Source: Selaginella moellendorffii
Taxonomy: Eukaryota > Plantae > Lycopodiophyta
DNA length: 64,000 nt
Assembly (NCBI RefSeq): GCF_000143415.4
Contig: NW_003314266.1
Location: forward strand, 3,009,964 to 3,073,963
Direction of reading: 5' to 3'
Shown: positions 14,446 through 50,963 of the stretch, piece after piece
Position numbering within the stretch: the stretch's first letter is position 1
Layout: the number at the start of each line of letters is the position of its first letter
The notes under the pieces: model-generated
What the model saw: the letters and a program-made list of their open reading frames with translations, nothing else
Told to the model about the DNA's origin: nothing
Database searches by the model: none
Made by a program: the position numbers and the translations under genes

Positions 14446-14491
14446 TGGGCTTTTTCCCTTTATATTTAAACCCATATGGATCGTCACTCAA

Positions 14492-20710: not shown

Positions 20711-20827
20711 ATTGACTTGTATTGGAGCATGAGAGTGGCTTTTGTCTTGACAATTAAATCCAAAACTAGCTTCCTGCCTTGGGAATGTTATTATTTACTA
20801 TTCATTTCCAGAAATTTTACTAAGAAC

Positions 20828-21232
20828 TTATGAACATTCATGAAATTCAACAGTATGTTTAGCATGTTCAAAACAACCTCTGAAGGACCACATATACCAA
20901 CCGCCCCAACCTGTAGTGGTATATTTTGCTGCACCAGTAAAAATTATTACATGATAAGTTTCATAACCCATGGAGAAGTCATCACTTTCTATTATTGGAT
21001 TTGGATCTGTTTTTTCCTTGAAGTCGTTCTCATTTGCTTGATTATATATAAAAATATTTACCTTATTTTCTTTGAGTTTTGAGTTGTAATAATCTAATTT
21101 ACACATCATAGAACTTTTCATATTTACAGGATTCCAACAATGGTCAAAAGTCTGAGCAATAGTAAAGATTATAGAACATGTAAATCCTAATACCAAAATA
21201 AGGATGAATGAACAAAACTTTACTAATCCCAT
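20828..21232 (-). CDS. Small secreted Trp/Cys-containing protein, copy A (134 aa, intronless)
   Basis: ATG at 21232, hydrophobic signal peptide. Clear paralog of 24184-24597 (shared HCWN, CKLDYY, NIFIYN, PNPI.E.DDF, AKYTTTGWGGW..WSF.GC..H..HTVEF.E). Confidence 0.82.
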   Translation of the reverse strand: MGLVKFCSFILILVLGFTCSIIFTIAQTFDHCWNPVNMKSSMMCKLDYYNSKLKENKVNIFIYNQANENDFKEKTDPNPIIESDDFSMGYETYHVIIFTGAAKYTTTGWGGWYMWSFRGCFEHAKHTVEFHECS

Positions 21233-22073
21233 ATTTGAAGAGAATTTTATATGTCTATTACACTCGTTGTTAAATGGAAATGGACTATGATTTAAATGAA
21301 GTTTCAACAATAAAGGACAAAAAAACATTGTTAACACTTTCTTAAGTCACTACACCAGCTGTCTCTTGTTTTTATTTTTCTGTTATTATTCTCTCTCTAT
21401 GTATGGTAATTGTATTGGATTTTTTTAAGCTTAGAAGAAAATTATTTCTCAAGAAATGCTAGTAAAATCAAAAAATGTATCAATATTTTTTGGCAATTTT
21501 GATATTTATACATATATAGCTAGAATAGTCTTAATTGTCATACCAAGACAACATGAACCATCCTTTGTATTATGAGTCTTGATAATCTTAATTTATCCCT
21601 CTCACTATGCTTTATGATTTTAAGAACAGTAATATATTACTACTTGGACAAAGTAAAAAAAGAATTACTAAATTTTTTATTAATATAGATTCAGTATTGA
21701 TGTGAATAAATCTAAAGCACTAAGATTTTAAGCAGATTTAAGAAAAATTGTGTAACTAAAAGTAGGTATTATTAATATATATGTAGTTAATGACTTTTTA
21801 AATCTTGAATTGAATTAGTAAAATACCATATCATGTTTTCTAAGGTATATTTAAATTTATATAATTGTCTACCTGTCTACTATTTGCCAGAAAATTCATT
21901 TTTAAAATTGCAAAATTAAATTCTAGATTTTTGCTAGAGTATATATATAAGGGCATTCCAAAGATGTAACTTGTTTTGCATTCAATCAACACAGTTTGAA
22001 AAAGAAGCTGGTGCTCGCAAGCTCCAATACAGATTACTACAAACTCCAAGTTCAAGGGAGTGTCACAGACATC

Positions 22074-28682: not shown

Positions 28683-30314
28683 TCAAAGCTTACGGCATTT
28701 AACGGTATATGCCGAGACGGTGGCGGAATAATCACCCGCGCTAGCGGAATATCCTTGGATGTTTCCAAACAGCACGCATCGCCACTCTACCGCCTCTGGG
28801 ACGTAGGGCATCGTCCGCGCGAGCTCTTGTGCGCCCTCCACGTGGCCGGCCCTAGACAGGAGATCTATCATAGCGCTATAATGTTGCTTAGATGGAGAGA
28901 TGCCAAAGTCTAAAACCATGGAAAGAAAGAAACTCCTTGCTATGGAGAGCTGTCCAATGTAGCTAGTGGAAATTAGCAGCAAAACAAAGCAAATAGAGTC
29001 CGGTGACACGTCGAAATTCATTAGAGTAAAAAGATAGCGTGCGTGGTAAAAATGCCCATTTTGGGCATATGCCGCCAGCAAGGCAGTCCACGTCACAAGG
29101 TCCCTTTGGGGCATTGCACGGAAGAGCATCTCGGCGTGGAAAACATGTCTGTTGTAGGTATATCCTAGTAGTACGGAGTTCCACGTCGGCATTGTCTTCT
29201 CTGGAGCTTCGTACAGTGTACGTTTTGCTAGATCCATTTGCCCATTGTGGGCATATGTCCAAGTTATTAAGTCGTACAATCTCGAGTCCCGGTAGGGCAT
29301 TCTTTCGTACAGGTCCACTGCGTAGTCGAGATTCCCATGTTGCGAATATGCTCCCATCATGCACGTGTACGACACAACGTCGTGGACTGGCATCTGGTCA
29401 AACGTACACTTGACGAGTTCTAGATTCCCTGTTTGGGAATATGCCGCGAGCATTGCGTTCCAGGCAATGGAATCCCTCTCTGGCATAGAGTTAAAAAGAT
29501 TCTCTGCCTCTTGAACTAAACCATCATTGGAATATAGCCCCAGTAGCGAAGTGAACGAAGACAAGCTTCTCTCTGGCATGGAATTAAAGATTCTTTCAGA
29601 TTCGAAAAGTTGCCCATTTGTGGCATTTGCAAGAAGAAGAACGTTCCATGCGATGATATCCCGCTCTTGCATTGCATTAAAAACAACCGCGATTTCATCA
29701 AAGCAGCCATGGTTAGCATAAACTCCCATGATAGCCGTACAAGAGACAATATCCACCTCCGGCATGGAGTCGTACACCAGCTTTGTGTGTAAGAGTTCGC
29801 CACCTTCGGCATTTGCCGAAAGCAAACACGTCCACGAGACTAAACTCCACTGCGGCATTCGATCGAACAAAACCTTCGCAGCGTCAGTATCGCCAAGTTT
29901 TGAGCGGATCGAGAGCATCGAATTCCATGACACTAAGTTCTTCTCGGGCATGGCGGAGAAGAACCTCGCCGCAAGCTCGAATTCCCCGTTAATAGCGTAC
30001 GCTGCGAGCATGGACGTCCACGAGACGATGTTTCGTCCGGGCATTTCCTCAAACAGTCGCTCAGCCTCGGGCAGCTCACCATTACGAGCGTTTGCAGTGA
30101 GCATCATGTTCCAGGCGACGAGAGTTTTGACGGGCATTTGCTCGAAGGTCTGCCTGGACTCTTTCAAGTTTTTGTTGCGGCAGTAGGCGTAGAGGAGAGT
30201 CTCCCACGAGAAAGAGTCTCTGGCATTGTCTTTGATGGAATCAAAGACTTCTCTGGCTCGCTTCAAGTCGCCGGTCCTGCCATACATTTCAACAAGTTTT
30301 ATCTGACAATTCAT
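28683..30314 (-). CDS. PLS-class pentatricopeptide repeat protein with E1 and a truncated C-terminus, no DYW
   Basis: Long run of about 31-aa repeats (MPERDSIAWNAMLAAYSQTG...) and QHYSAMIDLLSRAGHVEGA...MPYVP. Start uncertain; first in-frame ATG is at 30314. Confidence 0.85.
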   Translation of the reverse strand: MNCQIKLVEMYGRTGDLKRAREVFDSIKDNARDSFSWETLLYAYCRNKNLKESRQTFEQMPVKTLVAWNMMLTANARNGELPEAERLFEEMPGRNIVSWTSMLAAYAINGEFELAARFFSAMPEKNLVSWNSMLSIRSKLGDTDAAKVLFDRMPQWSLVSWTCLLSANAEGGELLHTKLVYDSMPEVDIVSCTAIMGVYANHGCFDEIAVVFNAMQERDIIAWNVLLLANATNGQLFESERIFNSMPERSLSSFTSLLGLYSNDGLVQEAENLFNSMPERDSIAWNAMLAAYSQTGNLELVKCTFDQMPVHDVVSYTCMMGAYSQHGNLDYAVDLYERMPYRDSRLYDLITWTYAHNGQMDLAKRTLYEAPEKTMPTWNSVLLGYTYNRHVFHAEMLFRAMPQRDLVTWTALLAAYAQNGHFYHARYLFTLMNFDVSPDSICFVLLLISTSYIGQLSIARSFFLSMVLDFGISPSKQHYSAMIDLLSRAGHVEGAQELARTMPYVPEAVEWRCVLFGNIQGYSASAGDYSATVSAYTVKCRKL

Positions 30315-30346
30315 AACAACGAAAAAGGTCACCTCTGGAAGATTTT

Positions 30347-32505
30347 TCAAAGGTTCCTCTCGTTGGGCTCCAACCAAGGATGACCTACGAACTCAAAGAC
30401 TTCTTTCTCGTTCTTGCAGATGACTCGAGCACCTTTGCTATCAACCTGAAGATAGGAGAAGCTTGTTTCCATAGAGAAGCATGTAAACAGTTTACTAACC
30501 TTGTGACGCTTGTGCTTCTCATACAAAATTGTTCTATACAAGCCAGTATCATCTAGTTTGTATCCTTTTTCATTTGCTAGAATTCGCAGCCTGTGAAACA
30601 ACAAAAGTCGCAATGCTATTTCTCATCGTTAACGCTACGTATGTACCTTCTGTTTAGAACATCGTTGCCAGTCCAAGCAATGAGACCAAATGGATATTGC
30701 TCCCAAGAGTACACCTGAGTAGAATCTGTGATAATCAAAAGATCGTTTGAAACACAAACCTTAAAATCAATACGATGCCGCTGCTCTCTTCCCGGATACT
30801 TGCATAACCCAAAGTAAGTATCCACAGCGTCATCGTTCAGTTCCTGCAATGTTGTTCATCTCATTAGCACAGGGAAGTGTTATTTCTACCTCGTGGTAAC
30901 CAATCAGCAAGTCTTCGGTGAGAAAATCAATGTCTTTCAGTCGTTGGACTAAGCGCCTCAGAAATCCCTTGTGACTGCAGAAAACTTTCAGTCAAAACTC
31001 ATAACAACGTAAGCAGACCTTGTGCCATCCGAGTGAGTGACAATCATGTCCATATCCCCTACCAGCGACTTCCCACGTCTATAAGAACCTCCACAAACAA
31101 CGGATATCTACAACGCAAGGATAAGCCGAGTGAAAAAACATATACCCCGGGTTGAATAGCACTAGCAATTTCTTGCACCAGATTTTCCACGTAGTTCGCC
31201 TAGAACGAAATGTCACTCGGGAGAACAAATCTCTAAATTGGATACCTCGCTGCGTGGAATTTTTGCGTTGATATCCTCGAAATATTGCAGCCCAAGCCGT
31301 TGGGTACGTGTAAGTGACTCGTCATGCCTTAAGTCCTCCAGGGAACGATGACCTTTCTCGTAATATTTCAAAGCGTTCGATGGCCCAATCCCCCACACTG
31401 AACCGAAAAGAGAAACAGTTTTCACCTGTAAATCTCAGGATGTCAAGTCTTCAGAATTACAGCTTTTACAAACGCACCTTTTCATCGTCTCTAAAATGCT
31501 CCAGTTTTGAAAGTTTCCCAGTGGATAGAATTTCCTGGATCTGTGAACCGACAACATGAAACACGAAAAAGAAGTAAATACGTACGTGATTCTGTAGCGA
31601 CTTTCCGATTGATGGAGCATTCTTCACTTGATCTACACTCGTAACTTGATATGGTAGCTTTTCCAGATAGGATATCGCCTTGTGATAGCTATAAGATCTT
31701 CTGTTGTCTCCAAGACCTGAAAAAAGTTCATGAACGTTTTGATGTACTCTTGCCAACAGAAATGCTCACCGTTTTTGTATATGTCCCGGAGTTCTCCAAA
31801 AGGGCCTGTAATATTTTGGTTGAGGTTTGGAGGAGCATAAATCTGTTACACAATCTAGATATCAAACACGAGACCAATAAAAAGAGCCGCTTACCTCATT
31901 TTGCCCCGTGGAATCATCAGGTTCCTTTGGGAATACGAGTGCAGACCTCCATTCTTCACGTTTAGTATCACTGATGGCAGCATCAGTGTCTGAGTTTAAG
32001 GATTCAGTAGCACTCTCGTCAGTCGCGGTGCAATCAGTTCCAGTGCCAGCGGATTCTTCAGCTGAGGCACCATGATAATCCTGAAACAAATTGTAAGACT
32101 CTGCAGGTAACCTTTGCCCTGCCTTGAGACAGTCTTCCAGCCAGTCGTATTTCAAAAATGACTGAAAAAGAGAATGTAAGAAACATATCCAGCAAGAAAT
32201 AAGGAACTCACCACTTTAAGCCGTTTCAGCCGTTTCAATCTCTTCCAATCTTTGCTCTGGTCCAAGTGCTGCGAAGAAACAGCAAAGACATGAGTCAGCT
32301 GTTTTGTTACGTGATCTTCTATCTTTCCTCCCAATGCAGCGAGCTTTGTCTTCCACACCTAGCAACGCAGCACACAATTCATATCGTAGAAAAAAATACC
32401 AAAACTCCCGGCTACCTGAAGACGAAGCTGGACCACACCAGCCTCCACAAAAAACCCAACAATCCCATCGAAAGAAAGCTTATCACTGGCGGTGGAAGTC
32501 GTCAT
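30347..32505 (-). CDS. POLL: DNA polymerase lambda (family X, BRCT domain), multi-exon
   Basis: BRCT (LRLQ|VWKTKLAALGG...THVFA...WLEDCL), lyase domain (RSYSYHKAI), HhH VWGIGP, GSYRRGK..GDMDMIVTH, RHRIDFK, AWTGND and C-terminal WLEPNERNL. Start approximate. Confidence 0.92.
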
Positions 32506-32981: not shown

Positions 32982-34388
32982 TCAAACTTTGATGTGTAGA
33001 AGTTCTTCAACCGGGCATCTGCAAATCGGGCATAAATTTGTTTGGTGTCTCAACACATTGGCACAATCGCTACACATACACTGAGAAAAAAAAAAAAAAA
33101 AACGAATCAAAGTTAGAACCAAAGTAGAACAAACCAATCGAAGAACTTACCATATGCCTGCACGGCAAGACAGTCGTGTCCTTGGGCTCGGACAAGCAAA
33201 TCACGCATTCTTTCCCAGAAGAATCGCTGCTGTTGTTGCTCGCTTCACTGCCACCAATCCCGAAAATCTCCTGGAGCTCGTAGCGAACGCCATCCACCCA
33301 GATGATCTGCTTAACAACTCGAACTTGGAGCTCACCCTCGTCCCCGTCTCTTTCAATCTTTCGTATCACGGCATACGTCTGTTGACAGTGGATCCACTTC
33401 TTGAGTGCTCCACCCACGGGCTCGGGGGATTCGGCAGCGTCGGGTGGTGGATTCTTTGGAGTCGTCTCGATCCGGATGATGAGAGGGTAGACGTTGTCCG
33501 TGCCGAGCTGCGAGAGATCTTGCTCGTCGATGAGAGAAAAGTCGAGGCCAGATTCCTGCTTAAACTTCTGGCCCAGTCCACTCTTGAAGTGGTGCCTGGT
33601 AGGCGCTGGAAACATCTTACTGAGAGATACCACGCTACCATTGGAAGTTTCCTTTGACAGGAAGAACACAGTGATACTGTAACAAAAAAAAAAAAACGTT
33701 AGAAAAACGGAGGAGTTGTCTTGCGAAACTCTAGAAAACGAATACAGGCCACCGACCAAGAAATCTAATCTAATCAGTAGAGCCAAGATAAGAACTCGCA
33801 TGAATCCATGAGCCCAGGCAACCAAACCATGAATCCAGGCAAGATAAGAACTCCCAGGCAAGTTCTAGCTATGCAAGAAGGGAAAAAATTGATGTTTGCA
33901 TACCTTCCAGAAGTGGTGGCATCGAACGAGAATGCTACGACATGATTGCCAGGCATGGCCTCGTCTCTCTCGAGCCGCAGCGTTCCTTTGTTGAGATTTA
34001 CCTCGTTCCTGACCGTGTTGGCGGTCTGGTACTCTGGAACGGGCACTGGAGCTGGAGCTGGAGCTGACGAGCTTGGAACAATGGCAGTAGATCCATTCCA
34101 AGGCAGGGGAGTCCGCGGCGCTGGCAGGAAGAGCTGGGGAGGAGGAGCGGGAAGCCTTGGCGGAGGAGGCGGTGGCGCTGGAGGCCCGTAATATCCTTGC
34201 TGCTGCTGGAAGAAATAGCTCCCGGGGCGAGGAGGACGATAGTAGTATGGTGAGACCATATGGGGGCAAGGAGCGACCTCGGTGTGATAGCCGGGCGGAG
34301 GAGGAGGGAGCGGGGGATAGATCGGACCTGGCGGATGCTGCTGGTGGTGGTGGTGGCGTCGTCTTCTTCTGCTGCTACTGTTGCCCAT
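32982..34388 (-). CDS. LOG2/LUL (Mahogunin-like) RING E3 ubiquitin ligase
   Basis: MGNSSS myristoylation start, Pro-rich region, [50 protein letters not shown], and [23 protein letters not shown]|CMCSDCA...CPICR. Confidence 0.92.
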
Positions 34389-34975
34389 GAATTTGGATCC
34401 CTGGCTCCGGATTGAAAGCGCGTTCTTCCTAAGAACCCTAGCCAATAAGAAATCAAAACTGAGCATATGCAAAACGAATATACTTAAGCATACTCACCAG
34501 AATATGCTTTAGAAGGGCCTCGTGTTGAGTAGTTCACCAGGTTGTGCTAGAAGATGGGCTCTTCCATTGCTTCATACATGGCATTCAAAACTAGTGTGCC
34601 TCTGTCTAGAAGTAAACTTAGTAGCATCACTAACTACACAGTTGACCAAAGTATAACATAAATATTTTTGTATGGGGTTTCCAATTCTTGTCCATTTGAG
34701 GGTGTTATTTCTTTTTCTCCAGTGTGTCCAGCCACAACATCAAGCATGACACCATCTTCTAGGATTTAGTATGGTTTGAGTTTTCATTTTCTAAAGTCTA
34801 AAGAAAATATTCCAAGAATTGTTTTTGCATATAAAGCCATGCAAAATATTCTTTCATTTATATATTAGATACATGGTCACACAGTGCCCACTATGAACGT
34901 GAGATCAAGAGATTTAAAAGTGTCATTTTGAAGAAGATTATAATTATAATACTTCCTACTCTTGATCAATGCCCC

Positions 34976-37924
34976 TATTGGAACATAGTCATCACCATGA
35001 CTTATAAAGGGAGTACATAAGGATTATATCCCTTTGATTAATACATATGTGTGTCAGCTGTATATTCTTGGTATTAAAAAAGTAAAATTAGAAAGAATAT
35101 TTTTTTAAGCCAGTGTTGTAAGTGGTGAGGAGGTTGCCAAGGGGCTATTAGAACAAGGGATACTAATTTGTAAATAATGGGAAAATCTAGTGGATTTGAG
35201 GGATTAAAACTTCTTTTATCCCATAAAAATGATTTTAAATATTTTTTAATTGTTGTTGAAAGGAAGAAAAGTTTTAAGTTAGCCATTGGAAAGGAGTGGC
35301 CACTATTAAAATGGAAATAAAGCAAAGTTTAAGAAGTGGTCCTTAAAGCAAACAATAAGATATGAAAAGTGTAGAGGATTTCAAAGATGTTGACAACACC
35401 ACAAGAATAATCTTGATTAAATGAGTCAAATATGAATATTTTAAAAGTAAAAAATGCCACCACTTCAGCTGAGGCATAACAAGTGTTTCATTAAATTTAT
35501 TGTGACTAGTTATTAGCATTAAAAATAAACACATTTTGACAAATGATAAATTATAAAAAGTAATGAAGAAAGCTTCAAAGTATATTAAGAAAATGACCAC
35601 TCTTAGAGGACAAATTACATAGTATAAAGTCTAACTTTGCAAATATTATAAGGGCATTTTTTATTTTAGAGCTTTAATCAAGACAACAACATTTAGGATT
35701 ACAAATCCAGCACTATATAAATTTCATTGACATTTATGAGGGTAATTTGGAGAATTCACAAAAGAGAACTCTTTAGAAAAGTTTGTAGCAATGATTGCAG
35801 CTCAATTATTAGAAAAAGGGTCTTTCAAGCCATCAAAGGTGGTACACTCAATTAAGCAGGTAAGAAAAAAGGCCATGTGTGTTTTGTGCCTAAATTTAGT
35901 ATTGGTTTAAAAATGCGTTAGAAGGGCAACTTTTGGATTTAATGTATTATATGATAGCAAATAAGGCTTTCTTACAAAAAATAATATATAGAAATTTTTC
36001 AGTAGATGTAAGCATGGCTAATGGTGAGTCTTTACATATTATTGTTTATGAATTTGTCTATAGAGGTGTTTTGTTTATACCTAGCTTAATTTAAAATTTG
36101 CTATTAGTTTCTCAACTTATAAGTCAAAGTGTTTATTCTTGTTTTCACTGCAATAGTGTTGATTTCAAGTTCCTAAGATTTACAATTGCTAAAAAGGACT
36201 TTACTATCTCTCTTCACAACTTTAAGTATTAGTAAATATAACAAATATCACTGATGCTTCTATTTTTCATCTATGGCATGCTTGCTTTACACATGCTAGA
36301 TGGTATTAAGTTAAGGAAGTCAATTCTTTAATATATAAAGTTCCCTCCCTCAATAGAGTGACAATGGACAATTATGAAGCATGTATATGGGGTAAAATGA
36401 AGAAGAAATCCCTCTCCTAAAATGCCAAGACTCAAGGTACTTTAATTCTAGATTGAGCTTCACTAAGTAAATCTTGAATGAAAATTTTTATCATTTTCTA
36501 ATTACTAATGATTTTTATTGTTTCTTAAAAATGATTTTCATAAACTAAAAGATCAATAAGTTTCATAATTAGATTAATTATGTGGAGCACAAGTTTGCTT
36601 GCACCTTACATACTTTTTGAGTGGACAGAGTACGAAAATTAATCTCTAGAGAATTCCAACTCATCTTGCACTAAGATGGTTTTCATACATTTGGTTCTTG
36701 CAATTACTATTTAGTTGTAGAGTAGAAAAGAATGATTTTTTAAATGGAGAATTTGAGCAATTAATATACATTTAATAACCTCATACTTTTGAAGTGGAAG
36801 GCAAAGAGACTTATATGTTTAATTTAAAATAATCCATCTATAGTTTTAAACAATCCTTGTAAATTTAGTATACTACTTTAAATAGATTTTTTCCAATGTT
36901 GGGTTTGTGCACATTGGAACATTTATATTTGTCACAAAAACATTTTGGTTAGAGTATACATTGATGATTTAATTATGATAGAAAAAACACTCTCTCTATA
37001 TTAGTTTAAGGAATAACTTGTGAAATGGTTGAAAATGAAAGATCTTGGTAAGTTTTGCTTAGATTCTTGTAACAAAAAGGCATGAACACTTTCAATCCAG
37101 TATATTAAAAAGTTTTTAAGTGAATATTAGCAATTTTTCACTCAATCATATACTCATATTCCATCATTGCAAGTTCATAAAATCTCTCAAGATGATGAAT
37201 CTTGTACTGAAGTGGAGAAAAGGTAGATGCAAATTCTTTCATATCAAAATATTATAGGAGTGATGATATCTTTAGTAACAGTAAGTTGTTTAGATATTAC
37301 AACAGAACAAATATCCACTCTCAACTTGGAGTTTCAATGCACAAAGATTGAAGATATTAGTATGGATTCTCAAAAATGATATAAGATGGTGAATGTGGAT
37401 TTAGTAAGGGACTTTAACAATCAAAGATCAATAATAAAGTACAATTTCAAATTTTTTAACATTATTGTTTTTTGGTGTAGTTAAAAATAAAGAAAAGTTG
37501 CACTTTCCATCTATTAAATTGAGTATAGTATTGTGACTAAAATAGTTAAGGAATCATTGTGAATGTGAAGATTTTACTTAGACAAAAATTTTGATATTCA
37601 TAGAACACATGGAATGCAATCCTCAACCCTATTCATCAACATACACTTCAAAATATTTTGCTATTTTATATGTGAAAGGATTTAAATGAGAGAAATTCAG
37701 TTGCTCACATATCCACAACCAACTTGATAGTAAATTTATTGACAAAGACATCCTTGCTAGTGGCTCAATTTGAATGTTTATAAATCAAACTTAGGTTTAA
37801 GGGTTGAGGTTAAGTTAAGTTATAGCATATTCACTAGTGTAATTTATGAAGGTAAGAAGTATGTAAGTATTGTATCCCTTTGATTAATAAATATATATGT
37901 TTGCCTATATATTTTGTCTCAACA
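34976..37924 (+). mobile_element. Ancient, heavily decayed Ty1/Copia element with both short LTRs
   Basis: Shared LTR core TATCCCTTTGATTAATA near 35026 and 37874; termini T(A)TTG...CAACA; TSD-like GCCCC/ACCCC; PBS-like TGGTATT at 35069. Eroded motifs HLWHA, FLNGE, SIYSFKQS, YIDDLI and LLTK occur in Copia order. Confidence 0.72.
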
Positions 37925-39721
37925 ACCCCTACTTCATACAATGTTGTGAAGGGTGATGGTGTCTTAGTTGATAACAGTCATATGAAGAGTTGGAGTAGCA
38001 ATAATGGTAGTGGCATGAAATTTTGCTATAGTCATTTGGCATAATTGCCACTCTTAATCACTCTATGGGTGATTGATCAAAATGTAAGTTGTGATAAGGT
38101 GTTATGGCAATAGTGTGGTGGTGTCATAAAAGTTTGAATTTAGTAGTGTCATATGGTTGGTTGGAGCTGTGAGTAGAGAGTCGTTAGTGGTCATTATGAA
38201 AGGTTGCAATGGGGATGTGGCTATGAATTGAAATTATGGAGTTGTTGGTTGAAAGCTATGGCATCATATGTTTCTCTAAATTGTAGTTAAGTTTGAAAAC
38301 ATGTTGTATCATTTGCTTAGCATGGGGCACAAAACTAAGTTTGACATGAAATGGTCAAGATGCTTTACAAAACTAACCAATTATTTATGACCATTAAGTT
38401 ATGGTAAATGTAAGCTAGGTTGTTTTTCCACTCATAATTATTTTATTCTACAGGGTTTAGGATGATTAGTTAGGCATTACCATATTGTGTATAGGCTTGG
38501 GGGGTGAGTGTGTTGTGTTGTCTATAAACTATATTTCTTAGCTGGAGGATCACTCATGGGGGGGTTTGCTATATTGTTAACAAGCCAATAGTTGTAAAGT
38601 AGAGTTGGGAGCTAATATAATGCATGTATAAATGGCTAGTTTAGGAATATAAGTTTAGCTAGTATTTTTTATTTTTATTATTAAAATTTAACACCATTTC
38701 ACACAGTTTTAAATTCTTATAGTTCACTGTAACATTAGTTAAGTCTGAACTATATATTCTAAATAAATATTATTTCAAAATAAATAATTTTTAATTTTAA
38801 GTTATATTGTATTAAATAATCCTTGTAAAATTCACAGCTATTAAGAGTATTTACCATTAAATAAATGCCGTATGACTATTAAGGAAATAGCCACTAAATA
38901 AAGCTTCATGAGTTAGCAAAATATATGATTAAATTTATATTTAGTTTTAAAGTTCATTCATGCTAATTATTAAAAATTGAATAAATTATTTTTGAAGTAT
39001 TTTTAGCTTGAACAAGAACCTTCATTCTCTTTACTTAACATAATAATATACCTTATTGACAATTATTCATGCTTGATTATGCTATTGATTTTAAGGTTAT
39101 TCATTCAAAAGCCACACACACTATTGACATGAACTATTTTATATTTTAATTGTTTTTACAAATTTTACATTTCATAATAGTGTTTTTATACTAACATTAT
39201 TATGTTTTTTAATTCTTACTCATGCAATGTGGCATTACCCAATTTAATTTGTCTTCAAAGAAACATAAAGAATTTTAAATAAAAATGTTCTCAAGATATT
39301 TTCTAATATTGCAATTTGCATAACTATAATTTTCAAGCATATTATATTTGTGTTCACTTATAGTTATTTCCCAATTTGCAATTCAAAGCAACACTTGTTA
39401 GTTAGAGGCTTGGAACAATATATCTACTAAGGCTTGTTACCCTTAGTAGTGCCTGTAGATTTGGCAAGTGAGTGGTAGTAGAGTGTTCCTGCTATTGATC
39501 AAAGTACCAATTTGCTAGAGCTGTTGAAGCTCAATCTGCGTTGCTGCTTGCCCTGATGGATGAGAACCAGTACGGTTCACGCAGCACTCATGGACGTTTA
39601 TAAGACGTGGTTTATGCTAAAGTATTTTCCGTCCATTAAATAGGTTCTACAGCATATTCTGGTAGTCCTTAGTACTTATTCAACTTTCTTCCTAAACGGG
39701 CTCTAGTGATCATCGTTGGAT

Positions 39722-40070
39722 CTATGGGCCGCCACCGGACGCTGTCCGAATGATCTGTAGCAACGCTGCGCAGAGCATACAAATCGGAGTCAGGATCTAC
39801 ACTCTAGAACCGCAAAATCGATCGATCGACAAGCACTCGATGGATTACCTGAGCCGATGACCACGAAAATGAAGAACCCTAGAACAATTGGGCCAACTGG
39901 GTACGCGTTGCCCTTTTTGATGCTCGATTCGGGCACCGCGCCCCGCTTGAAGATGTTCTTCTGGAATTTCTGGATCTTCTTGTCGGCCAGTCGCTTGGAT
40001 GTCGTCTGCAAAGCCCAGGAATCCAAGATTTAGTCGAAGAAAAGAGAGAGAAAGAGGAAGAGCTCACCAT
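39722..40070 (-). CDS. RAMP4: Stress-associated ER protein RAMP4/SERP1 (3 coding exons, first is ATG only)
   Basis: M|TTSKRLADKKIQKFQKNIFKRGAVPE...YPVGPIVLGFFIFVVIGS|ALLQIIRTA. Confidence 0.92.
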
Positions 40071-40281: not shown

Positions 40282-41919
40282 ATGGTCGTAGCGCGCGCCC
40301 CAAATCTCGGTGGAATCGAGAGCCCGGACGAGAAGTTTGCCCCGGCACACTATGCCAAGCTTATCAAATCGTGCGCTATCTCCAGGGATCTGCTCGAGGC
40401 ACGGCGGATCCACTCGCTGGTGATCCACAGCGCGCATCGCAACAATCGCTTCCTGAAAAACCTCCTAATTGAAATGTATGGCAAGTGCCACAGCATCGAG
40501 GACGCCCGGATTGTCCTGGATCAAATTCACGAGCCCAATTGCTACACCTGGAACATCGCTCTCGCGGCATTTGCCGAGAACGGGCATCTGGAGAAAGCGC
40601 GGAAGATCTTCGAGGGGATTCCACAACCCAACAGCGTGGCTTGGAACTCTATCATCACCGCTTACGCCAAACATGAGAATCTCCAGGAAGCGAGAAGGAT
40701 TTTTGAGAAGATGCCAGATCCCAACGTGGTGACGTGGACGGCAATGATAACAGCATATGCTCAGCAGCGGCATCTTGGCGAGGCGAGAGATCTCTTTGAC
40801 CGGATGCCGGTCAAGGACGTGGTGGCGTGGACCAGCATGTTGACCGCATATGCCGAAAACGGGGATCTTGAGCAATCAACGAATCTGTTCGAAACGATGC
40901 CCCATAAAGATATCGTTGCCTGGAATGCGATGCTCGCGGCGTATTATCGGCTAGGTAATTTGGATCAAACAAAAGAACTTTTTGATACCATGCCTCGAAA
41001 AGATTCTGCGTCCTGGAATCTTATGATACTAGCATATGCCGAAGTTGGGAATATTGCCGAAGCACAAAAACTTCTTGAACTAAGTCCTTGTCGTGATGTC
41101 ACGGCTTTTACTATCCTAATCACTGCTTTTTCCCAGCACAAGAAAGTAGAGGAAGCTTTTAAATTGTTTAGGGAAATGCCTCGTCGCGACATTGTGGCAT
41201 GGAACGCTATGCTAGCGGGGTATGCCCATAACGGGCATCTTGAGGAGGCGAAACTTATGTTTGACCACATGCCTCAAAGAGATTCGATCTCTTGGACCAC
41301 CTTGGTAGCAGCATATGCCTGGAATGGGCATCTTGGAGACGCTAGAGCTATGTTTGAAAAGATGCCAAACCAAGACTACGTGACAGTGCCAACTTTGATA
41401 GTTGCGTATGCACAGCACGGGCATATTATACAAGCAAAGAATTTGTTCTCAAGAACTTCTCAAGGAGAGGTAATGTCGTGGAATGCAATGCTCACATCCT
41501 ACATTTTAGGTGGCGAGCTGCAAAGTGGTCTAGATCTTCTTTTTGATATGGCTGTGGAGGGCCTCGGTCCCGACGAGATCACGTTTCTTTGCATTCTCTC
41601 GGGCTGTGGTCACTTGGGACTCTTGGAAGAATGTAGAAAGCACTTCAAGAGGATGAGATGCGAGTATAACTTAGCTCCAGGGATCGAGCACTTTGTGTGT
41701 CTCGTTGATATTCTCGGTCGATGCGGTCAGCTCGCAAAGGCCGAGGAGCTCATCAAGACGATGCCTTTCGTTCCAAATCGTGTTTCGTGGTCCACTTTTC
41801 TGAACGCTTGCAAGATCCAGAAAAGCTCGAATCATTCCGCAGTGGAAGTCGTCAAGACGAGCCCCGATAAAAAAGACGCTGCCCCGTTTGTGATGCTCTC
41901 AAATCTCGTCACTCCTTGA
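40282..41919 (+). CDS. PLS-class PPR protein with E domain, no DYW
   Basis: Intronless, about 31-aa repeats; EHFVCLVDILGRCGQL...MPFVP..VSWSTFLNAC...APFVMLSN. Confidence 0.92.
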   Translation: MVVARAPNLGGIESPDEKFAPAHYAKLIKSCAISRDLLEARRIHSLVIHSAHRNNRFLKNLLIEMYGKCHSIEDARIVLDQIHEPNCYTWNIALAAFAENGHLEKARKIFEGIPQPNSVAWNSIITAYAKHENLQEARRIFEKMPDPNVVTWTAMITAYAQQRHLGEARDLFDRMPVKDVVAWTSMLTAYAENGDLEQSTNLFETMPHKDIVAWNAMLAAYYRLGNLDQTKELFDTMPRKDSASWNLMILAYAEVGNIAEAQKLLELSPCRDVTAFTILITAFSQHKKVEEAFKLFREMPRRDIVAWNAMLAGYAHNGHLEEAKLMFDHMPQRDSISWTTLVAAYAWNGHLGDARAMFEKMPNQDYVTVPTLIVAYAQHGHIIQAKNLFSRTSQGEVMSWNAMLTSYILGGELQSGLDLLFDMAVEGLGPDEITFLCILSGCGHLGLLEECRKHFKRMRCEYNLAPGIEHFVCLVDILGRCGQLAKAEELIKTMPFVPNRVSWSTFLNACKIQKSSNHSAVEVVKTSPDKKDAAPFVMLSNLVTP

Positions 41920-41978: not shown

Positions 41979-44012
41979 CTAGTCCACTGCTACGATGTTG
42001 GACAGGAGAATGTACGAGGAAGTATCTTGCGAGTCGAGTGAGTGTAAGCTCTCGGCAGCTCGAGCTCCGCGAGATCTCTCTCCGTGAACTTTGGAGGCCG
42101 CGAGGAAACCCGACCAGGCAACGTTGTCGGGCGACATGGGCATGCTCTCGAGAAGCTCATTGGCTCTTTGGAGCTGGCCGGCCCTCGAGAGGCAGTCAAC
42201 TATACAGGAGTAGTGTTCCTTGCCGGGGGACAAGCCATGGTCAAGCACCATCAAACTAAAACAATGATGGCTGTCTTCGATCATTCCTAGGTGGCTCAAA
42301 CCGGTTAAGATCACAAGGAACGCTATGTGACCGGGTTTAAATCCTTCGCACTCCATCACTCTCAAAAACTCGAGTGACTTTAACACTGTGGCTTTGTTTC
42401 CTCCAAACGCAAAGGCCGTGATCACGGCAGTCCAGGAGACGATGTTTTGTAGAGGCATTTCATCAAAGAGTTTGAGCGTGGTCTCGATCTTCGCGTTCTT
42501 AGCGTAAGCAGCAAGCATTGTGTTCCAGGAGGCGGTGTCTCGCTGCGGAAGATCGTCAAAAACTCTCTTGGTTTGATCGATGTGGCCGTTTTGAGCATAA
42601 GCTCCAAGAAGTGTGTTCCAGGAGACGATGTCTTTCGCGGGGGTTAAGCTGTGGAGCTCTTGAGCTTCGCGGAGATGGCCAGCTTCTCCATAAGCTGCTG
42701 CTAGAGCGTTCCAGGAAACGGTGTCTCGCTCAGGCATCTCATCGAAACATTTTTTAGCTTCTTCTAGCTTGGAGTTTCGAGCGAGGGCGATGGTCATCAC
42801 GTTCCAGCTCGAGAGATCTCTCCGTGGACTCGACTCAAACATCTCTCGAGCGATCTGGAGGCGTCCATCCCTGGCGAGCACGGAGATCATCAAGTTCCAG
42901 ATCACGAGATCACATTCTGGAGTTCCGTCGAAAAGCTCAGTGGCTTTCCTCAAACTTCCAACTTGAGACAATGCGGTGATCATCGTAGTGTAGGAAACTA
43001 GTGACCTTTGCGGCATAATGTCGAAAGTTCTTTGGCACTCTTCAATATGCCCGGCTTCGGCATATGCAAAAAGCTGGATATTCCAAGACATGAGATTTCT
43101 TTCTGGAATTTCCAGGAATATCATTTTCGTTTCAAATGCATGTCCAGCTTGGGCATAGGCCGACATTATAATATTCCAGGAAAGAATATTCCTCAAGGGC
43201 ATAGTGTTAAAAAGCATTCTAGCGTCGCCAAGATACCCTTTTTCGGCATATGCTGTTATCAAGGCATTCCAAGTAGAAACATCTCGATCTTCCATTATAT
43301 GGAAAAGATTATTTGCCGCGTCAAGGTTTCCATGCTGTGCACACGCTGTTATCATGGCATTACAGGATATTACATCCTTCTCGGGCATTTGATCGAAAAG
43401 ATCCTTTGCCTGGTCAAGATACCCTCTTTTGGCATATGCTGAGATCATAGCCGTGGTTGAAATTACGGTCTTTCTCGGCATTCGATCAAAAAGACGCTTT
43501 GCATCCTCAACTCTATCGTAGATAATGTAGCAATTTATAAGGATATTCCAAGAGATATCGCTGTCCTTGGGAGATTCCTTGAAGATTTCCACCGCCTCCT
43601 GAAGATGCCCACCCTGGGCATATGCCGCGAGCATCGAGTTCCAGGCCACATCGTTCTTCGCGGGCATCGCGTCGAATATTCGCTTGGCGCCATGGAGCTC
43701 GCCGTTTAGGGCGTAGGCGTTGAGGAGGATGCTCCACGAGTAGATGTTGGGATCAACGATGCGATCGAAGACAATGCGCGCCTCCGCGACGCTGCCGAGC
43801 TTGCCATACATCTCCACCAGCAGATTGGCCAGGTATCGGCTATGGCGCTCCGGCGATCGCTGGATTTGCTCGTGGATCGCCCGCGCCTCCGCCAGATTGC
43901 GCGTGTTCCCGCACCGCCGGATGGATTGCGCTAGCATCTCGACCGGATCGAGGTAATCTCGCCGGAGAATTGGTGCATTGCGGTGCCCGGATTGAGCTGA
44001 TGCTTGCAGCAT
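41979..44012 (-). CDS. PLS-class PPR protein with E domain, no DYW
   Basis: Intronless 677-aa ORF of about 31-aa repeats; [16 protein letters not shown]...[12 protein letters not shown]...SYILLSN. Confidence 0.92.
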
Positions 44013-44051
44013 TTTTCATCCCTCCCAAGAACCCTAATTAGGGCTTTAGCG

Positions 44052-46497: not shown

Positions 46498-48428
46498 ATG
46501 AGCGAGGACGTCGACAAGCACGTCTTGCGGAAGTACCACGTTTGCCAAAAGCTCGGCAAGGGTGTAAGTTGACGGCTCAAAAAGAGTTTTTTATTTGTTG
46601 GTGTTATAACTGCTTTGTTTTACTGTTTGCAGGCTTATGGAATCGTTTGGAAAGCGTTTGATAGGAAGACCAACGATGTTGTTGCTCTCAAAAAGATATT
46701 TGACGCGTTTCAAAACTCGACTGATGCTCAGGTTTGTGGTTCTTTGTCAAAAGTTCCATCTTGCTGACTTGCTGGTTCCAACGTAGAGGACCTTTCGCGA
46801 GGTGATGTTTCTTCAGGAGATCAACGATCATGAGAACGTCATCAAGTTAGTTTCCGCACCTCTTAAGACTGCTGGCAGTTACATTAATGAACTCGCAGGT
46901 TGACAAACGTTCTCAAAGCGGAAAATGACCGTGACTTGTACCTAGTGTTTGAGTACATGGGTAAGTTTGCAGGAAAAACTGTAAGCTTATCGATCCATTC
47001 CGCAATTTTTCTCTGCGCAGAAACGGATTTGCATGCTGTTATAAGAGCCAATATTCTCGAGGATGTACATAAACAAGTAAGTTCTTCCGGCTTTTATGTT
47101 TGGCTAAATCCGAGGTGTTTGCAGTACATCATGTATCAACTCTTTAAATCTTTGAAGTATTTGCACAGCGCAGGACTGCTGCATCGAGATATCAAGGTGA
47201 CTTTGTTCAGCCATTGTAAAGAACTGGTGAAAGTATTAATGCTTTGAACTTTCAGCCAAGCAATCTACTTTTGGATTCGGATTGCCGATGCAAGCTTGCA
47301 GATTTTGGTTTGGCACGATCGGTATGAGAACGCTTTACAATTCTTGTATGAGCCTTTTCTTTTTTGAGTGAAGGTTGCCCAATTGAAAGATGACATGGGA
47401 CAAGCGCAAGTGCTAACAGACTATGTTGCTACTCGATGGTACTCCAATTAGAAGCATCTTCACATCATGGATTTTACAAAATGTGGTTTATCAAACAGGT
47501 ATAGAGCACCCGAGATTCTTCTTGGTTCCACAAAGTAAGCAGGTGAGACTTTTATGGTAACCGTTTGTGAATTAACAATCTCGCTTAACAGCTACACCTT
47601 TGGAGTGGACATGTGGTCGAGTGGCTGCATTCTTGGCGAGTTGTTGAACGGGAAGCCTGTTTTTCCAGGTGAGTCTGTGATAAACACGGTTAAAATCTCT
47701 GAATCTCTGCACGTACAGGGGCATCGACTATGAACCAGATTGAAAAAGTTCTGGATCTAATAGGAAAACCGGCATCGGTATGTGACGCGCTGATTTTTTC
47801 AGCCGGACTGACACTGTTCTGATTGGAGACAAAGTGAAGGAGGACATAGCAGCTTTCGAATCGCCATTTGCTGCAGCTATGATTGAGAACATGGCTATAA
47901 CTGGCCCCAGGTGGGAAAGAATAAGAGTTTTAAGATTGATTGAGTGTTTCACTCTGAGCAGATCATTTAGAAAAGCTTTCCCCAGCGCCACGCCTGAAGC
48001 TGCGGACTTACTACGCAAATTGCTACACTTTAATCCTCAGAAGAGGCTTACAGCGGAGGTAACTTTGCAACTTCTTTTGCTATAATCTTCCTGACTTGTG
48101 TGTGTGTGTGTGCTGCAGCAAGCATTGCAACATCCATACGTAGCTCAATTTCACAACCCTCGTGAGGAGCCATCGTGCAATCGATTGATCAGGATTCCCA
48201 TTGACGACAATCATAAGTAAGAGCTGGGCTTTTTCTGTCGCTCTGACTTATCCCCTTTTGCTTTCAAACAGATTCACGATCCACGAGTATCGGGAAAGGC
48301 TATACGCCGAAATCATCAGCCGGAAGAAAGAGATCAGGAAGAAGGCTCGAGAGCGAGAACGGAGCCTCCACAGAGAGATGTCAAGAATGCAATCGAGACG
48401 CTCGTCTTACCATCCCAGAGCAAGTTAG
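46498..48428 (+). CDS. MAPK15: ERK7/ERK8 (MAPK15)-type MAP kinase with TDY activation motif, many tiny introns
   Basis: [13 protein letters not shown]...[12 protein letters not shown]...[22 protein letters not shown]...[34 protein letters not shown]...[19 protein letters not shown], diagnostic of the ERK7/8 subfamily. Confidence 0.9.
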
Positions 48429-48689
48429 AAGTGAGCTTTCTTGCTCTCCTGTTCTGTAGACTTATTCGAGATCTCTCTCTTCCAGCTTCGCGAAACTTAC
48501 ACCAAGTGCCTGTCGCGGAGGAACCCCACTCCTTACTTCATCGAGAATGGAAAGAGTGGATCAATCGCTCGAAGTAGAGAGTGGGGTTCTGTCCGTGACA
48601 GAAACTTGGTATGTCACGCATTGCTTGCCACTGAGATCTGCGCAGAAAAGCACGCAAAGAGTTAAAGAGATCTTTCGTTAGCTCCAAAT

Positions 48690-48789
48690 GTCCTCACCAT
48701 ATAACATGGAGCACGCGAGCCAAAGGTCCTCACCATATAAAATGGACCACGCGAGTCAATGATATTCAAAGGTCCAGCACGTGAGTCAA
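48690..48789. repeat. 36-bp direct repeat x2 plus a partial third copy
   Basis: GTCCTCACCATATAA.ATGGA.CACGCGAG.CAA at 48690 and 48726; CAAAGGTCC.GCACGTGAGTCAA follows. Confidence 0.75.
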
Positions 48790-48941
48790 CGAAGTTTTGC
48801 TCAACATTCGTGCCTAGTCAAAGGTCGACGAAGTTTTGGTCAACTTTAGGACCCGGCACATTGTTAATGCTTTTATTACAGTAAAAAGCTTGCTTTCACT
48901 ACAGTAAACAGAGTTCTTCCTAGGAAGAATGAAAGAAGCGT

Positions 48942-50189
48942 TCACTGTTCGAGGGGAGAATTTGCTACTGCTTGATCCAATTCCCACTCGTAAACACCCT
49001 GGCATTCCTCTGCGAGGCTCGTGGAGCACGCCCGGACTATCCATCGCAAGGCGAAGAGATTCGCCTCCACGCCCTCGAGATCCATCTCCCGGAACAATCC
49101 CAGCGCCTGGCGATCCAGCCCGCGATGCGCACACGCCCACAGCATCGTGTTCCACGACACCGCATCTCTCTCGCGCATTCCCCGGAAGAAATACCAGGCC
49201 CTCTCCATCCCGCCGCACCTCGCAAAGAGATTTAGCACCGAGTTCTCCACGCCAAGGTCCAAATCCTCCGTGCTCTCGCGGATCGAGACCCCTAGCTCGA
49301 GCCTTCCCTGTACGGCACACGCGAGGATCGCGGACCGCCGCGCGTGAGAGCTTGGCCGTACGCCCCGGGACACCATAGCTTCGTAGAGGTCAAGAGCCTC
49401 GTCAAAATGCCCGTGTTGGGCATATGCTGAAATCATCGCGTTTGCCACCATAGCATCTCTTGGAGCGAATTCTTCGAACCACGCTCTTGCGCAATCGATG
49501 CATTCGCAGCTCACATACATTTCCAAGATGCTGATTTGGAGAGCTTTGAGGAGTTCTTGGCCGGTGGCAGCGATCCTCGCGTGAACAGAGATGCCATCTC
49601 TGGGCATCTTGAGCGATCCACACGCCTCGAGCGCGGCCGCGAAGATCGCCGCATTGGGCTCGATCTCCGCCTGGAACAACAGCCTCCGGTAGAGATCGAT
49701 CGCCTTGCGGTGCTGCCCATTGCGCGAGTACCCCTCGATCATCGCGCTCCACGACGCGGCGTCCTTGATCTTGATCCTCGCAAACGCCACGCGCGCGTCC
49801 TTCGTCCCGCCCAATCGCGCCATCGCCTGGACGAGAAGATTGCCCACTTGGGCATCCTCCGCGGCCCCAGGCAAGTTCGCGAAGATCCGGGCCTGGATCG
49901 CACGCGCCTCTTCTAGCGACTGGGCGCCCGCGAGCGACGATTCGATCCATCGCCAGTGGGAGGAGAGAGGGGACCGGCGATCCGAGAGGTGCTGCTGTGC
50001 CAAGTCCGCCCATGGATCGCCGGGGAGATTGGCGACCATCCACGAGAGATAAGAATTGGAAACGCTGCTTAGGCGCTTCCCCTTGTGCCTTCCAAAGCTA
50101 AGAACGATCGAGTTGCGAGCGCTCTCATCGGTTTTCTCTCCAGAGCACAGCGCGAGAATTCTCACTCCCACTCCCACCGATTGGATCAT
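48942..50189 (-). CDS. PPR protein with an N-terminal FGxHKG...YLxW (DUF3820/QSregVF_b-like) domain
   Basis: Single 415-aa ORF. Residues about 23-70 read ARNSIVLSFGRHKGKRLSSVSNSYLSWMVANLPGDPWADLA, followed by PLS repeats (SWSAMIEGYSRNG, ANAMISAYAQHG, SWNTMLWACAHRG). Confidence 0.82.
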   Translation of the reverse strand: MIQSVGVGVRILALCSGEKTDESARNSIVLSFGRHKGKRLSSVSNSYLSWMVANLPGDPWADLAQQHLSDRRSPLSSHWRWIESSLAGAQSLEEARAIQARIFANLPGAAEDAQVGNLLVQAMARLGGTKDARVAFARIKIKDAASWSAMIEGYSRNGQHRKAIDLYRRLLFQAEIEPNAAIFAAALEACGSLKMPRDGISVHARIAATGQELLKALQISILEMYVSCECIDCARAWFEEFAPRDAMVANAMISAYAQHGHFDEALDLYEAMVSRGVRPSSHARRSAILACAVQGRLELGVSIRESTEDLDLGVENSVLNLFARCGGMERAWYFFRGMRERDAVSWNTMLWACAHRGLDRQALGLFREMDLEGVEANLFALRWIVRACSTSLAEECQGVYEWELDQAVANSPLEQ

Positions 50190-50323
50190 CGATACAAATC
50201 TTTAGTTGACAAAGCTAAAACAAATCAACACCGCTTTCTTCTAGGCCGGATGGATCTCTCAAGCCATCCAACTCGAGGATGCCTCTGTTTCAAAAGCTTG
50301 TGTTAATTAAGAAATTGTAATTT

Positions 50324-50395
50324 CGCCGTTGCCGGGGATTGAACCCGGGTCGTCCGCGTGACAGGCGGAAATACTCACCACTATACTACAACGAC
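50324..50395 (-). tRNA. tRNA-Asp (GUC)
   Basis: GTCGTTGTAGTATAGTGGTGAGTATTTCCGCCTGTCACGCGGACGACCCGGGTTCAATCCCCGGCAACGGCG folds as a cloverleaf with anticodon GTC; plant cytosolic type. Confidence 0.96.
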
Positions 50396-50963
50396 ATTAG
50401 ATACTTTAAAGGATAAAAGGCAATTAGAAAAACCACATTTACCTCCACCTATTGTATGTGATGATATCTGAGCACATTTATACAATATCTACGATGCTTC
50501 TGCTTGTTTATAACAAGTCCAAAAGCTTTACTAGCTTGTGTTGCCTGGCTAGAAACTCTCCCAACAGCTTGAGAGATTTTGTGATGCTATCTGATTTAGT
50601 CCTTTGTTGAAAGGTCTGTTTTCCTTTATTCAGGATTTACAAGCTTTCCACCTGAGAAGGCATGATGCACAACATTCTTTTCTACTTTTATCTCTGATAG
50701 ATTTTTTTGTTAGCATGAAGAAGCATCTCTTCTTGAGCAGAAGAGTGTTCTAGCTCGATCTGGCGCCTTGTAGAGCCGATCCCGGGTTCGAACCCACCCG
50801 AAGAAGAGGGACCCAATTTTTTTAGACATGCTGGGGCAGAGATTCGAACGTGTCACGTCTTAGTACTTCGACAAATTTTGGAGGTCCTATAATCTATAAA
50901 ACCTTTTTCAACATTATCAAGTTAGTGTCTTAGTGATCCAAGGTTCTTTCTTTCAACTCGAAG

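What the first reader, a model, noticed from the sequence alone, without database searches (positions are those of the whole stretch)
48942..50189. PPR protein fused to an FGxHKG...YLxW (DUF3820/QSregVF_b-like) domain
Seen: one uninterrupted ORF places ARNSIVLSFGRHKGKRLSSVSNSYLSWMVANL...WADLAQQHL ahead of a short PLS array with no E or DYW domain. From memory, FGK(H/Y)KG-x-L-x-P-x-YLxW is a small bacterial/phage domain also appended to some nucleases and helicases, and it occurs in a stand-alone plant protein with a similar 'ARDR.IDFGK.KG.MLG.LPS.YLKW...WA.LA' context. PPR accessory domains I know of are E/DYW, SMR, NYN, LAGLIDADG, RRM and a few others, mostly C-terminal; I know no PPR with this one. 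Inference: a new PPR architecture pairing sequence-specific RNA binding with a small nucleic-acid or partner-binding module.
Basis: partly seen in the sequence, partly recalled or inferred. Interest (0 to 1): 0.78.

Follow-up and report, generated by a model that had tools for sequence, protein, structure and literature searches.

The report
Short PPR protein with DUF3820 head
A transcribed spikemoss (Selaginella moellendorffii) gene really does join a small bacterial/phage-type accessory domain (DUF3820/QSregVF_b) to a short organelle-type RNA-binding repeat array; I found no paper on this combination, it recurs in this genome, and this copy lacks the editing enzyme that its longer relatives carry.

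Summary
Window 48942-50189 (-) is one 415-codon ORF. It is present in NCBI and intact in both S. moellendorffii haplotypes.

Residues ~24-71 are a real member of the FG(K/R)HKG...YLxW family (Pfam QSregVF_b/DUF3820 and ExoX-like_C):
- The direct Pfam scores fall below the curated cut-offs.
- An exhaustive HMMER search gave 107 relatives, with E-values down to 5e-13.
- 45 of the 54 aligned domain pieces match PF12843.
- The AlphaFold model superposes on Atlas models of that family (TM 0.72).

Residues 78-415 form ten PLS-type PPR motifs. There is no E or DYW domain, and no remnant of one lies downstream.

RNA contigs span the junction between domain and array. Stranded RNA reads are sense-strand, and both alleles are expressed at low level. 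The in-frame intron in the older gene model is not spliced.

The architecture is not unique. A second S. moellendorffii gene (XP_024516766, with its allele) and a transcript from another, unidentified plant carry the same N-terminal domain on full PLS-E-DYW editing factors. This scan has already noted six other such loci in this genome and followed one up. I found no paper describing the fusion.

Function is inferred only. Most likely this is a non-catalytic, sequence-specific RNA binder whose N-terminal module docks a partner or nucleic acid. A decaying truncated paralogue remains a serious rival.

The parts
48942..50189 (-). Complete 415-codon ORF plus stop codon: PPR protein with an N-terminal DUF3820-type domain. 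Equals the NCBI 415-aa protein P0153. The older model SELMODRAFT_439165 lacks residues 226-294.
   Evidence: The other haplotype (GL377598.1, L001:3001-4248) has the same intact ORF with 32 substitutions and no indel.
50121..50189 (-). Residues 1-23: short leader ahead of the domain, predicted disordered. A possible but unproven targeting sequence.
   Evidence: AlphaFold pLDDT is below 50 for residues 1-20. No targeting predictor was available.
49977..50120 (-). Residues 24-71: DUF3820/QSregVF_b/ExoX-like_C-type domain, a beta-hairpin carrying FGRHKGKR followed by two helices with YLSWMVANL and PWADLAQQHL.
   Evidence: Pfam ExoX-like_C E 2.4e-4 to 3.3e-4 (20.4-20.9 bits, cut-off 26.5) and QSregVF_b E 5.5e-3 (17 bits, cut-off 22). 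phmmer gave 107 relatives. Alignment A1 shows the invariant G and Y and the near-invariant F, G and W all present. Domain model pLDDT 83. Atlas fold match to a PF12843 cluster: TM 0.72, rmsd 2.2 A over 52 residues.
48945..49958 (-). Residues 78-415: ten PLS-class PPR motifs (L-S-P-L-S-P-L-S-P-L). The last is an atypical L-like tail. There is no P2/L2/S2, E1/E2 or DYW.
   Evidence: helix pairs at pLDDT >90. The array is colinear with residues 212-525 of the PLS-E-DYW protein P0051.
49308..49514 (-). 207-nt in-frame GT..AG 'intron' of the older gene model (removes residues 226-294). It is not spliced in the RNA contigs.
   Evidence: P0001 against the ORF; contig X1 record 1 runs 48884-50263 without a gap, and X2 records 10 and 11 cross both borders.
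50190..50263 (-). Probable 5' UTR. RNA contigs end at 50236 and 50263, between the tRNA-Asp gene and the ATG. The only upstream in-frame ATG (50267) lies beyond the contig ends and is closed by an in-frame TAG (50243-50241).
   Evidence: Transcript ends taken from contigs are only indicative.

Best explanation
SHOWN. This is a nuclear, intronless, weakly transcribed S. moellendorffii gene. Its product has four parts in order:
- a ~20-residue disordered leader;
- one DUF3820/QSregVF_b-type domain, a basic FGRHKGKR hairpin plus two helices;
- no long linker;
- ten PLS-type PPR motifs.
It belongs to a small group of plant PLS proteins with this N-terminal domain. The full-length members of that group end in E and DYW (cytidine deaminase) domains. 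This copy has neither.

INFERRED.
- The PPR tract binds a specific stretch of about 9-10 nucleotides of an organellar transcript. Five of the six P and S motifs keep canonical code pairs: N/D, S/N, N/S, N/D and N/N.
- Without a deaminase, the protein cannot edit on its own. It would act as a non-catalytic RNA binder or specificity/helper factor.
- The N-terminal module is predicted to pack directly against the first PPR helix. It would serve as a docking surface, for a partner protein or for nucleic acid. In bacteria and phages the same module is appended to exonucleases, helicases, HD, RNase H and ERF proteins.
For: - ORF and domains.
- Family membership of the head domain: hits P0047-P0050 pass the Pfam cut-offs; 45 of 54 pieces match PF12843.
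- Same architecture with E-DYW: P0049/P0155 (one intronless ORF, L005:3001-5256) and P0051. Colinear alignment of this protein with P0051, from the domain through the array, has E 1e-57.
- Expression: stranded RNA reads lie only in the sense orientation over 48886-49371 and 49777-50424. Contigs span the domain-PPR junction. Letters of both haplotypes are seen in RNA.
- The ORF is intact in both haplotypes, with omega 0.67 overall. The DYW-bearing paralogue pair gives a similar 0.58.
- The full-length model has mean pLDDT 89 and pTM 0.75, with the domain contiguous to the array.
- Partner enzymes of the domain elsewhere.
Against: - No experiment or solved structure shows what the domain does (searches found nothing informative).
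- Direct Pfam scores are below the gathering cut-offs, and the usual 'VP' before YLxW reads 'VS' here.
- The array is short, its third L motif is shortened, and it ends in an atypical tail.
- Between haplotypes the PPR part has 21 non-synonymous against 7 synonymous changes (omega 0.91). That fits weak or absent constraint.
- Expression is low.
- Organelle targeting is untested, and the leader is short and holds two acidic residues.
Confidence: 0.55

Rival explanations
1. This is a decaying truncated paralogue. It would be a former DUF3820-PLS-E-DYW editing-factor gene that lost its 3' half. It is still transcribed and still open by chance, but has no function of its own.
For: - There is no E/DYW and no remnant downstream.
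- Omega is 0.91 in the PPR part between haplotypes.
- One L motif is shortened and the C-terminal tail is atypical.
- RNA depth is low.
- S. moellendorffii is reported to have thousands of PPR gene models (PMC13386178), so relics are to be expected.
Against: - Both haplotype ORFs are intact over 415 codons despite 32 substitutions.
- Omega is no higher than in the complete DYW-bearing paralogue pair (0.67 against 0.58).
- The head domain has 3 synonymous and 1 non-synonymous change.
- Code positions in 5 of the 6 P/S motifs are canonical.
- Both alleles are transcribed.
- The whole protein models confidently.
Confidence: 0.3
2. The N-terminal domain is a passenger. On this reading, a PPR gene captured the 5' end of the stand-alone plant DUF3820 gene mainly for its promoter or targeting leader, and the domain adds nothing to PPR function.
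For: - The stand-alone plant proteins start with an L/R/S-rich leader followed by 'ARDRVVDFGRHRG...'. This matches 'ARNSIVLSFGRHKG...' here.
- The domain always sits at the extreme N-terminus of the PPR proteins.
Against: - The domain's key residues are kept in three diverged PPR lineages, which share only 25-30% identity in their arrays.
- P0049 has two full copies scoring above the Pfam cut-offs and almost no leader.
- The domain shows 3 synonymous to 1 non-synonymous change here.
Confidence: 0.1
3. The head is an artefact: a chance motif, a chimeric gene model or a misassembly, and not a real domain fusion.
For: Direct Pfam scores are sub-threshold. The older annotation of this gene contains a false intron, and the other haplotype is annotated as two fragments.
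Against: - E-values reach 5e-13 in a 1.84-billion-protein search.
- The same continuous ORF occurs on two haplotype scaffolds.
- RNA contigs cross the junction.
- The fold matches the family.
Confidence: 0.02

Closest known systems
S. moellendorffii PLS-E-DYW proteins XP_024516766.1 / XP_024536929.1 (P0049/P0155), and the 783-aa transcript product P0051 from an unidentified plant
   Same: They have an N-terminal FGKHKG...YLxW domain directly ahead of a PLS array. The alignment with P0051 is colinear from the domain through nine motifs.
   Different: These proteins have two domain copies (the first is degenerate in P0051), longer arrays and complete E plus DYW deaminase domains. This gene has one copy, ten motifs and no catalytic end. 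Identity in the arrays is only 25-30%, and composition differs (GC3 0.72 here against 0.46 in P0049).
Pfam PF12843 QSregVF_b (DUF3820) and PF20600 ExoX-like_C: small domains of bacteria and phages, stand-alone or appended to DnaQ/RNase_T exonucleases, SNF2/DEAD helicases, HD, RNase H, ERF and DnaJ proteins
   Same: Shared signature residues, predicted fold and size.
   Different: The host protein here is a eukaryotic RNA-binding PPR array. The domain is N-terminal rather than C-terminal. The scores lie below Pfam's cut-offs, and 'VP' has become 'VS'. No function of the domain is established in any context I could find.
Stand-alone Streptophyta DUF3820 proteins (for example pineapple LOC109714250, P0159/P0136/P0126)
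   Same: The plant-type sequence context is shared: AR..V.FGRH.G.RL.S...SYL.W and then PWA.LA. These proteins are a likely source of the module.
   Different: They have no PPR repeats, and about 200 further residues of low-complexity sequence. They are uncharacterised.
PPR proteins with other accessory domains: PPR-SMR, PRORP (PPR-NYN), PPR-LAGLIDADG, and PPR-TGM of bacterial origin (PMC4029402, listed)
   Same: The principle is the same: a sequence-specific PPR tract joined to a small module of bacterial ancestry.
   Different: Those modules are C-terminal, and most are enzymes with known activity. This one is N-terminal, non-enzymatic by its appearance, and of unknown function. (The list of fusions rests on general knowledge, apart from the cited title.)

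Membership tests
DUF3820 / QSregVF_b (PF12843) / ExoX-like_C (PF20600) | Score at or above Pfam's gathering cut-off | tested here: not met
   ExoX-like_C scores 20.4-20.9 bits against 26.5. QSregVF_b scores 17 bits against 22, with the piece scanned alone. In the whole protein the scores are 15.2 and 13.3 bits.
DUF3820 / QSregVF_b (PF12843) / ExoX-like_C (PF20600) | Significant similarity to proteins that themselves pass the cut-offs | tested here: met
   phmmer E-values are 5.2e-13 (P0047), 1.7e-12 (P0048), 4.2e-11 (P0049) and 1.2e-10 (P0050) in 1.84 billion proteins. All four score 42-72 bits on PF12843. 45 of the 54 aligned pieces match PF12843 at E<=1e-3.
DUF3820 / QSregVF_b (PF12843) / ExoX-like_C (PF20600) | Signature L.FGKHKGK.L..VP..YL.W | tested here: met
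   The invariant G and Y and the near-invariant F, G and W of alignment A1 are all present. The only departure is S for the usual P.
DUF3820 / QSregVF_b (PF12843) / ExoX-like_C (PF20600) | Same fold as family members | tested here: met
   The model (pLDDT 83) matches Atlas models of PF12843/PF20600 clusters at TM 0.63-0.72 and rmsd 1.9-2.7 A over 49-56 residues. Both sides are predictions, and the model used family members as its alignment. No solved structure was found.
PLS-class PPR protein | PPR repeats above the Pfam/TIGRFAM cut-offs | tested here: met
   PPR_2 98.5 bits, PPR 95.3 bits, TIGR00756 88.5 bits.
PLS-class PPR protein | Alternating P (35), L (35-36) and S (31) motifs | tested here: met
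   Manual segmentation gives L-S-P-L-S-P-L-S-P-L with one shortened L. Helix pairs in the model agree. No dedicated PPR motif caller was available.
PPR-E/DYW RNA editing factor | E1/E2 motifs and a DYW cytidine deaminase domain | tested here: not met
   There is no PF20431, PF20430 or PF14432 hit and no tblastn trace downstream. The relatives P0049 and P0051 have them.
Organellar PPR protein | N-terminal mitochondrial or plastid targeting peptide | not testable with these tools
   Only a 23-residue disordered leader precedes the domain. No targeting predictor and no localisation data were available.

The most novel reading that the evidence does not exclude
The DUF3820 module may be a pairing or recruitment handle that defines a lycophyte-specific class of editing complexes. 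Many family members carry the module in two to seven tandem copies, so it may self-associate. On this reading, deaminase-less copies such as this one supply RNA specificity and recruit DYW-bearing DUF3820 paralogues, or a shared organellar partner, through the module. This would parallel the way angiosperm E+ PPR proteins borrow a DYW domain in trans.
Probability: 0.1. Interest if true: 0.75.

Novelty: new variant of a known kind. Interest (0 to 1): 0.5.

Why it matters
PPR editing factors are being engineered as programmable RNA tools, and their known accessory parts sit at the C-terminus. A conserved N-terminal module borrowed from bacterial and phage DNA-metabolism proteins would be a new kind of PPR accessory. 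It is present on both complete DYW editing factors and this deaminase-less copy, in one of the most heavily RNA-edited plant lineages. It would also give a first experimental handle on DUF3820 itself, a widespread domain with no known function. This particular copy is the least informative member of the group, because it may be a relic.

Tried and rejected
- **Word-index searches.** I searched with the N-terminal regions of P0051 and P0049. Each returned only the query itself. They give no count of further fusions, and their blanks mean little.
- **PDB searches.** The sequence searches, Foldseek and VIA-align wide (best Z 5.0) gave no informative match. The fold has no solved representative that I could detect.
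- **PHROGs.** It gave one weak hit to a family of unknown function.
- **Literature.** DUF3820 appears in four papers, none on plants. QSregVF/PF12843/PF20600 appear in three unrelated papers. A search for the motif strings and three PPR searches and readings found nothing on this fusion.
- **ExoX C-terminal domain.** Two papers mentioning ExoX say nothing on the role of its C-terminal domain. My recollection that it contacts MutL is unverified and is not used.
- **Selection test.** I tested whether the head domain is more constrained than the array. The trend is 3 synonymous to 1 non-synonymous against 7 to 21, which is not significant (Fisher p = 0.08).
- **Source organism of P0051.** It could not be determined with the tools at hand.

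Full report
**The sequence.** Window 48942-50189 on the minus strand is a single ATG-initiated ORF of 415 codons.

The window is Selaginella moellendorffii.
- The older JGI model SELMODRAFT_439165 (P0001, 346 aa) is identical to the ORF except that it lacks residues 226-294.
- A 415-aa protein with exactly this sequence is also held by NCBI (P0153).
- The missing piece corresponds to window 49308-49514. This is an in-frame 207-nt stretch that happens to start with GT and end with AG.

**The second haplotype.** The gene is also on scaffold GL377598.1. RefSeq splits it there into 191-aa and 169-aa fragments. The DNA nevertheless carries the same uninterrupted 415-codon ORF, with 32 substitutions and no indel.

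**Expression.** One read-laying run (2,401 letters) gave the following.
- In two stranded RNA-seq runs, every read over 48886-49371 and 49777-50424 has its first mate on the plus strand.
- Reads that splice a GT..AG intron of the convergent plus-strand neighbour (48430/48486) have the opposite orientation.
- The reads over the ORF therefore come from minus-strand RNA, the sense strand of this gene.
- Depth is low: one to three reads per position, with about 12% of each run read.
- Contigs from two further runs cover nothing between 50425 and 50748, which is why I take them for RNA. They cover the ORF without a gap. X1 record 1 runs 48884-50263, and X2 records 10 and 11 cross both borders of the supposed intron.
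- The domain-PPR junction is therefore on one transcript, and the 207-nt 'intron' is retained.
- The contigs end at 50236 and 50263, upstream of the ATG. The only upstream in-frame ATG (50267) lies beyond them and is closed by a TAG.
- Letters of both haplotypes appear in RNA. Compare the differences at 49038, 49042 and 49064, and those in X2 record 11.

**The head domain.**
- Pfam scores are sub-threshold. Scanned alone, the piece gives ExoX-like_C 20.4-20.9 bits (cut-off 26.5) and QSregVF_b 17 bits (cut-off 22).
- An exhaustive phmmer search of residues 15-80 against 1.84 billion proteins gave 107 hits at E<=1e-3.
- The best four hits, after the gene's own other allele, have E-values from 5e-13 to 1e-10. 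All four pass Pfam's cut-offs for PF12843.
- In a 54-sequence alignment the consensus is L.FGKHKGK.L..VP..YL.W. All invariant and near-invariant residues are present here, except that S replaces the usual P.
- 45 of the 54 pieces match PF12843 at E<=1e-3.
- An AlphaFold model (pLDDT 83) shows a short hairpin carrying the basic loop, followed by two helices.
- Its nearest Atlas models are PF12843/PF20600 clusters, at TM 0.63-0.72 and rmsd about 2 A over 50-56 residues.
- No solved structure was found.
- Elsewhere the domain stands alone or is appended to RNase_T-type exonucleases, helicases, HD, RNase H, ERF and DnaJ proteins of bacteria and phages. It also occurs in multiple copies in fungal proteins.
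- A stand-alone Streptophyta family exists, for example pineapple LOC109714250. Its sequence context is close to the one here.

**The PPR array.**
- Residues 78-415 divide into L-S-P-L-S-P-L-S-P-L motifs.
- Five of the six P and S motifs have canonical fifth/last residue pairs: N/D, S/N, N/S, N/D and N/N.
- There are no E or DYW hits, and no trace of such sequence downstream.
- The full-length model has mean pLDDT 89 and pTM 0.75.
- Residues 1-20 are disordered. The head domain runs straight into the first PPR helix without a long linker.

**Is the architecture unique? No.**
- Among the 107 hits, the PPR proteins apart from this gene's own alleles are P0049/P0155 and P0051.
- P0049/P0155 are S. 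moellendorffii XP_024516766.1 and XP_024536929.1, an allelic pair of 751 aa. They have two N-terminal domain copies above the Pfam cut-offs, then PLS, E and DYW. P0049 is encoded by a single intronless ORF.
- P0051 (783 aa) comes from transcript contigs of three 2025 runs of an unidentified plant. It has a degenerate copy plus a good copy of the domain, then PLS, E, E+ and DYW.
- This window's protein aligns colinearly with P0051 from the domain through nine motifs (E 1e-57).
- This scan's notebook lists six other loci in this genome read as PPR plus DUF3820, one of them followed up. One note of 2,256 letters is the length of the P0049/P0155 coding sequence. I did not test the others.
- I found no paper describing the fusion.

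**Constraint.**
- Between haplotypes, Nei-Gojobori omega is 0.67 for the whole gene.
- It is about 0.1 for residues 1-80 (3 synonymous, 1 non-synonymous change) and 0.91 for the array (7 synonymous, 21 non-synonymous).
- The contrast between the two parts is not significant (p = 0.08).
- The complete DYW-bearing pair P0049/P0155 gives 0.58.
- These data therefore do not separate a working gene from a relic.

**Reading.** What is shown is a real, transcribed fusion of a DUF3820-type domain to a short PLS array. It is one member of a small plant group whose other known members are complete editing factors. What is inferred is that it binds a specific organellar RNA without editing it, and that the head acts as a docking module. 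The main rival, at about 0.3, is that this copy is a truncated relic. The origin of the module, from the stand-alone plant gene or otherwise, is suggested by shared sequence context but not resolved.

Noticed in passing
window 50323-50396 (-): A tRNA-Asp (GTC) gene lies 134 nt upstream of the PPR start codon on the same strand. It confines the PPR gene's promoter and 5' UTR to a very short interval. Contigs of the tRNA run on into unrelated sequence, as expected for a multi-copy gene.
   Followed up: partly
window 49308-49514 (-), and L001:3001-4248: Both public annotations of this gene are faulty. The JGI model removes an in-frame 207-nt 'intron' that RNA contigs retain. On the other haplotype, RefSeq splits an intact 415-codon ORF into 191-aa and 169-aa proteins.
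   Followed up: yes
window 48720-48884: The 3' flank of the gene differs structurally between haplotypes and strains. The X1 contig has 82 other letters in place of 132, and the haplotype alignment breaks down here. This explains the zero read depth at 48724-48885.
   Followed up: partly
window about 47800-48720 (+): A convergent protein-kinase gene (Pkinase on the other haplotype's annotation) ends here. Minus-strand RNA reads also cover 48400-48642, so the two genes' 3' ends may overlap as antisense transcripts. The annotated range of the kinase gene on the other haplotype encloses the PPR gene.
   Followed up: no
window about 29000-30400 (-), 40345-41900 (+), 42000-44030 (-): Three further PPR coding regions lie in the window. 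None has the DUF3820 head. Two of them show E-motif-like similarity to the C-terminal parts of P0049 and P0051.
   Followed up: no
window 10000-22000 and 34000-40000: Long AT-rich blocks (GC 0.28-0.35) sit between gene-rich stretches of GC 0.45-0.56. The PPR ORF itself has GC3 of 0.72, against 0.46 in its DYW-bearing relative P0049.
   Followed up: no
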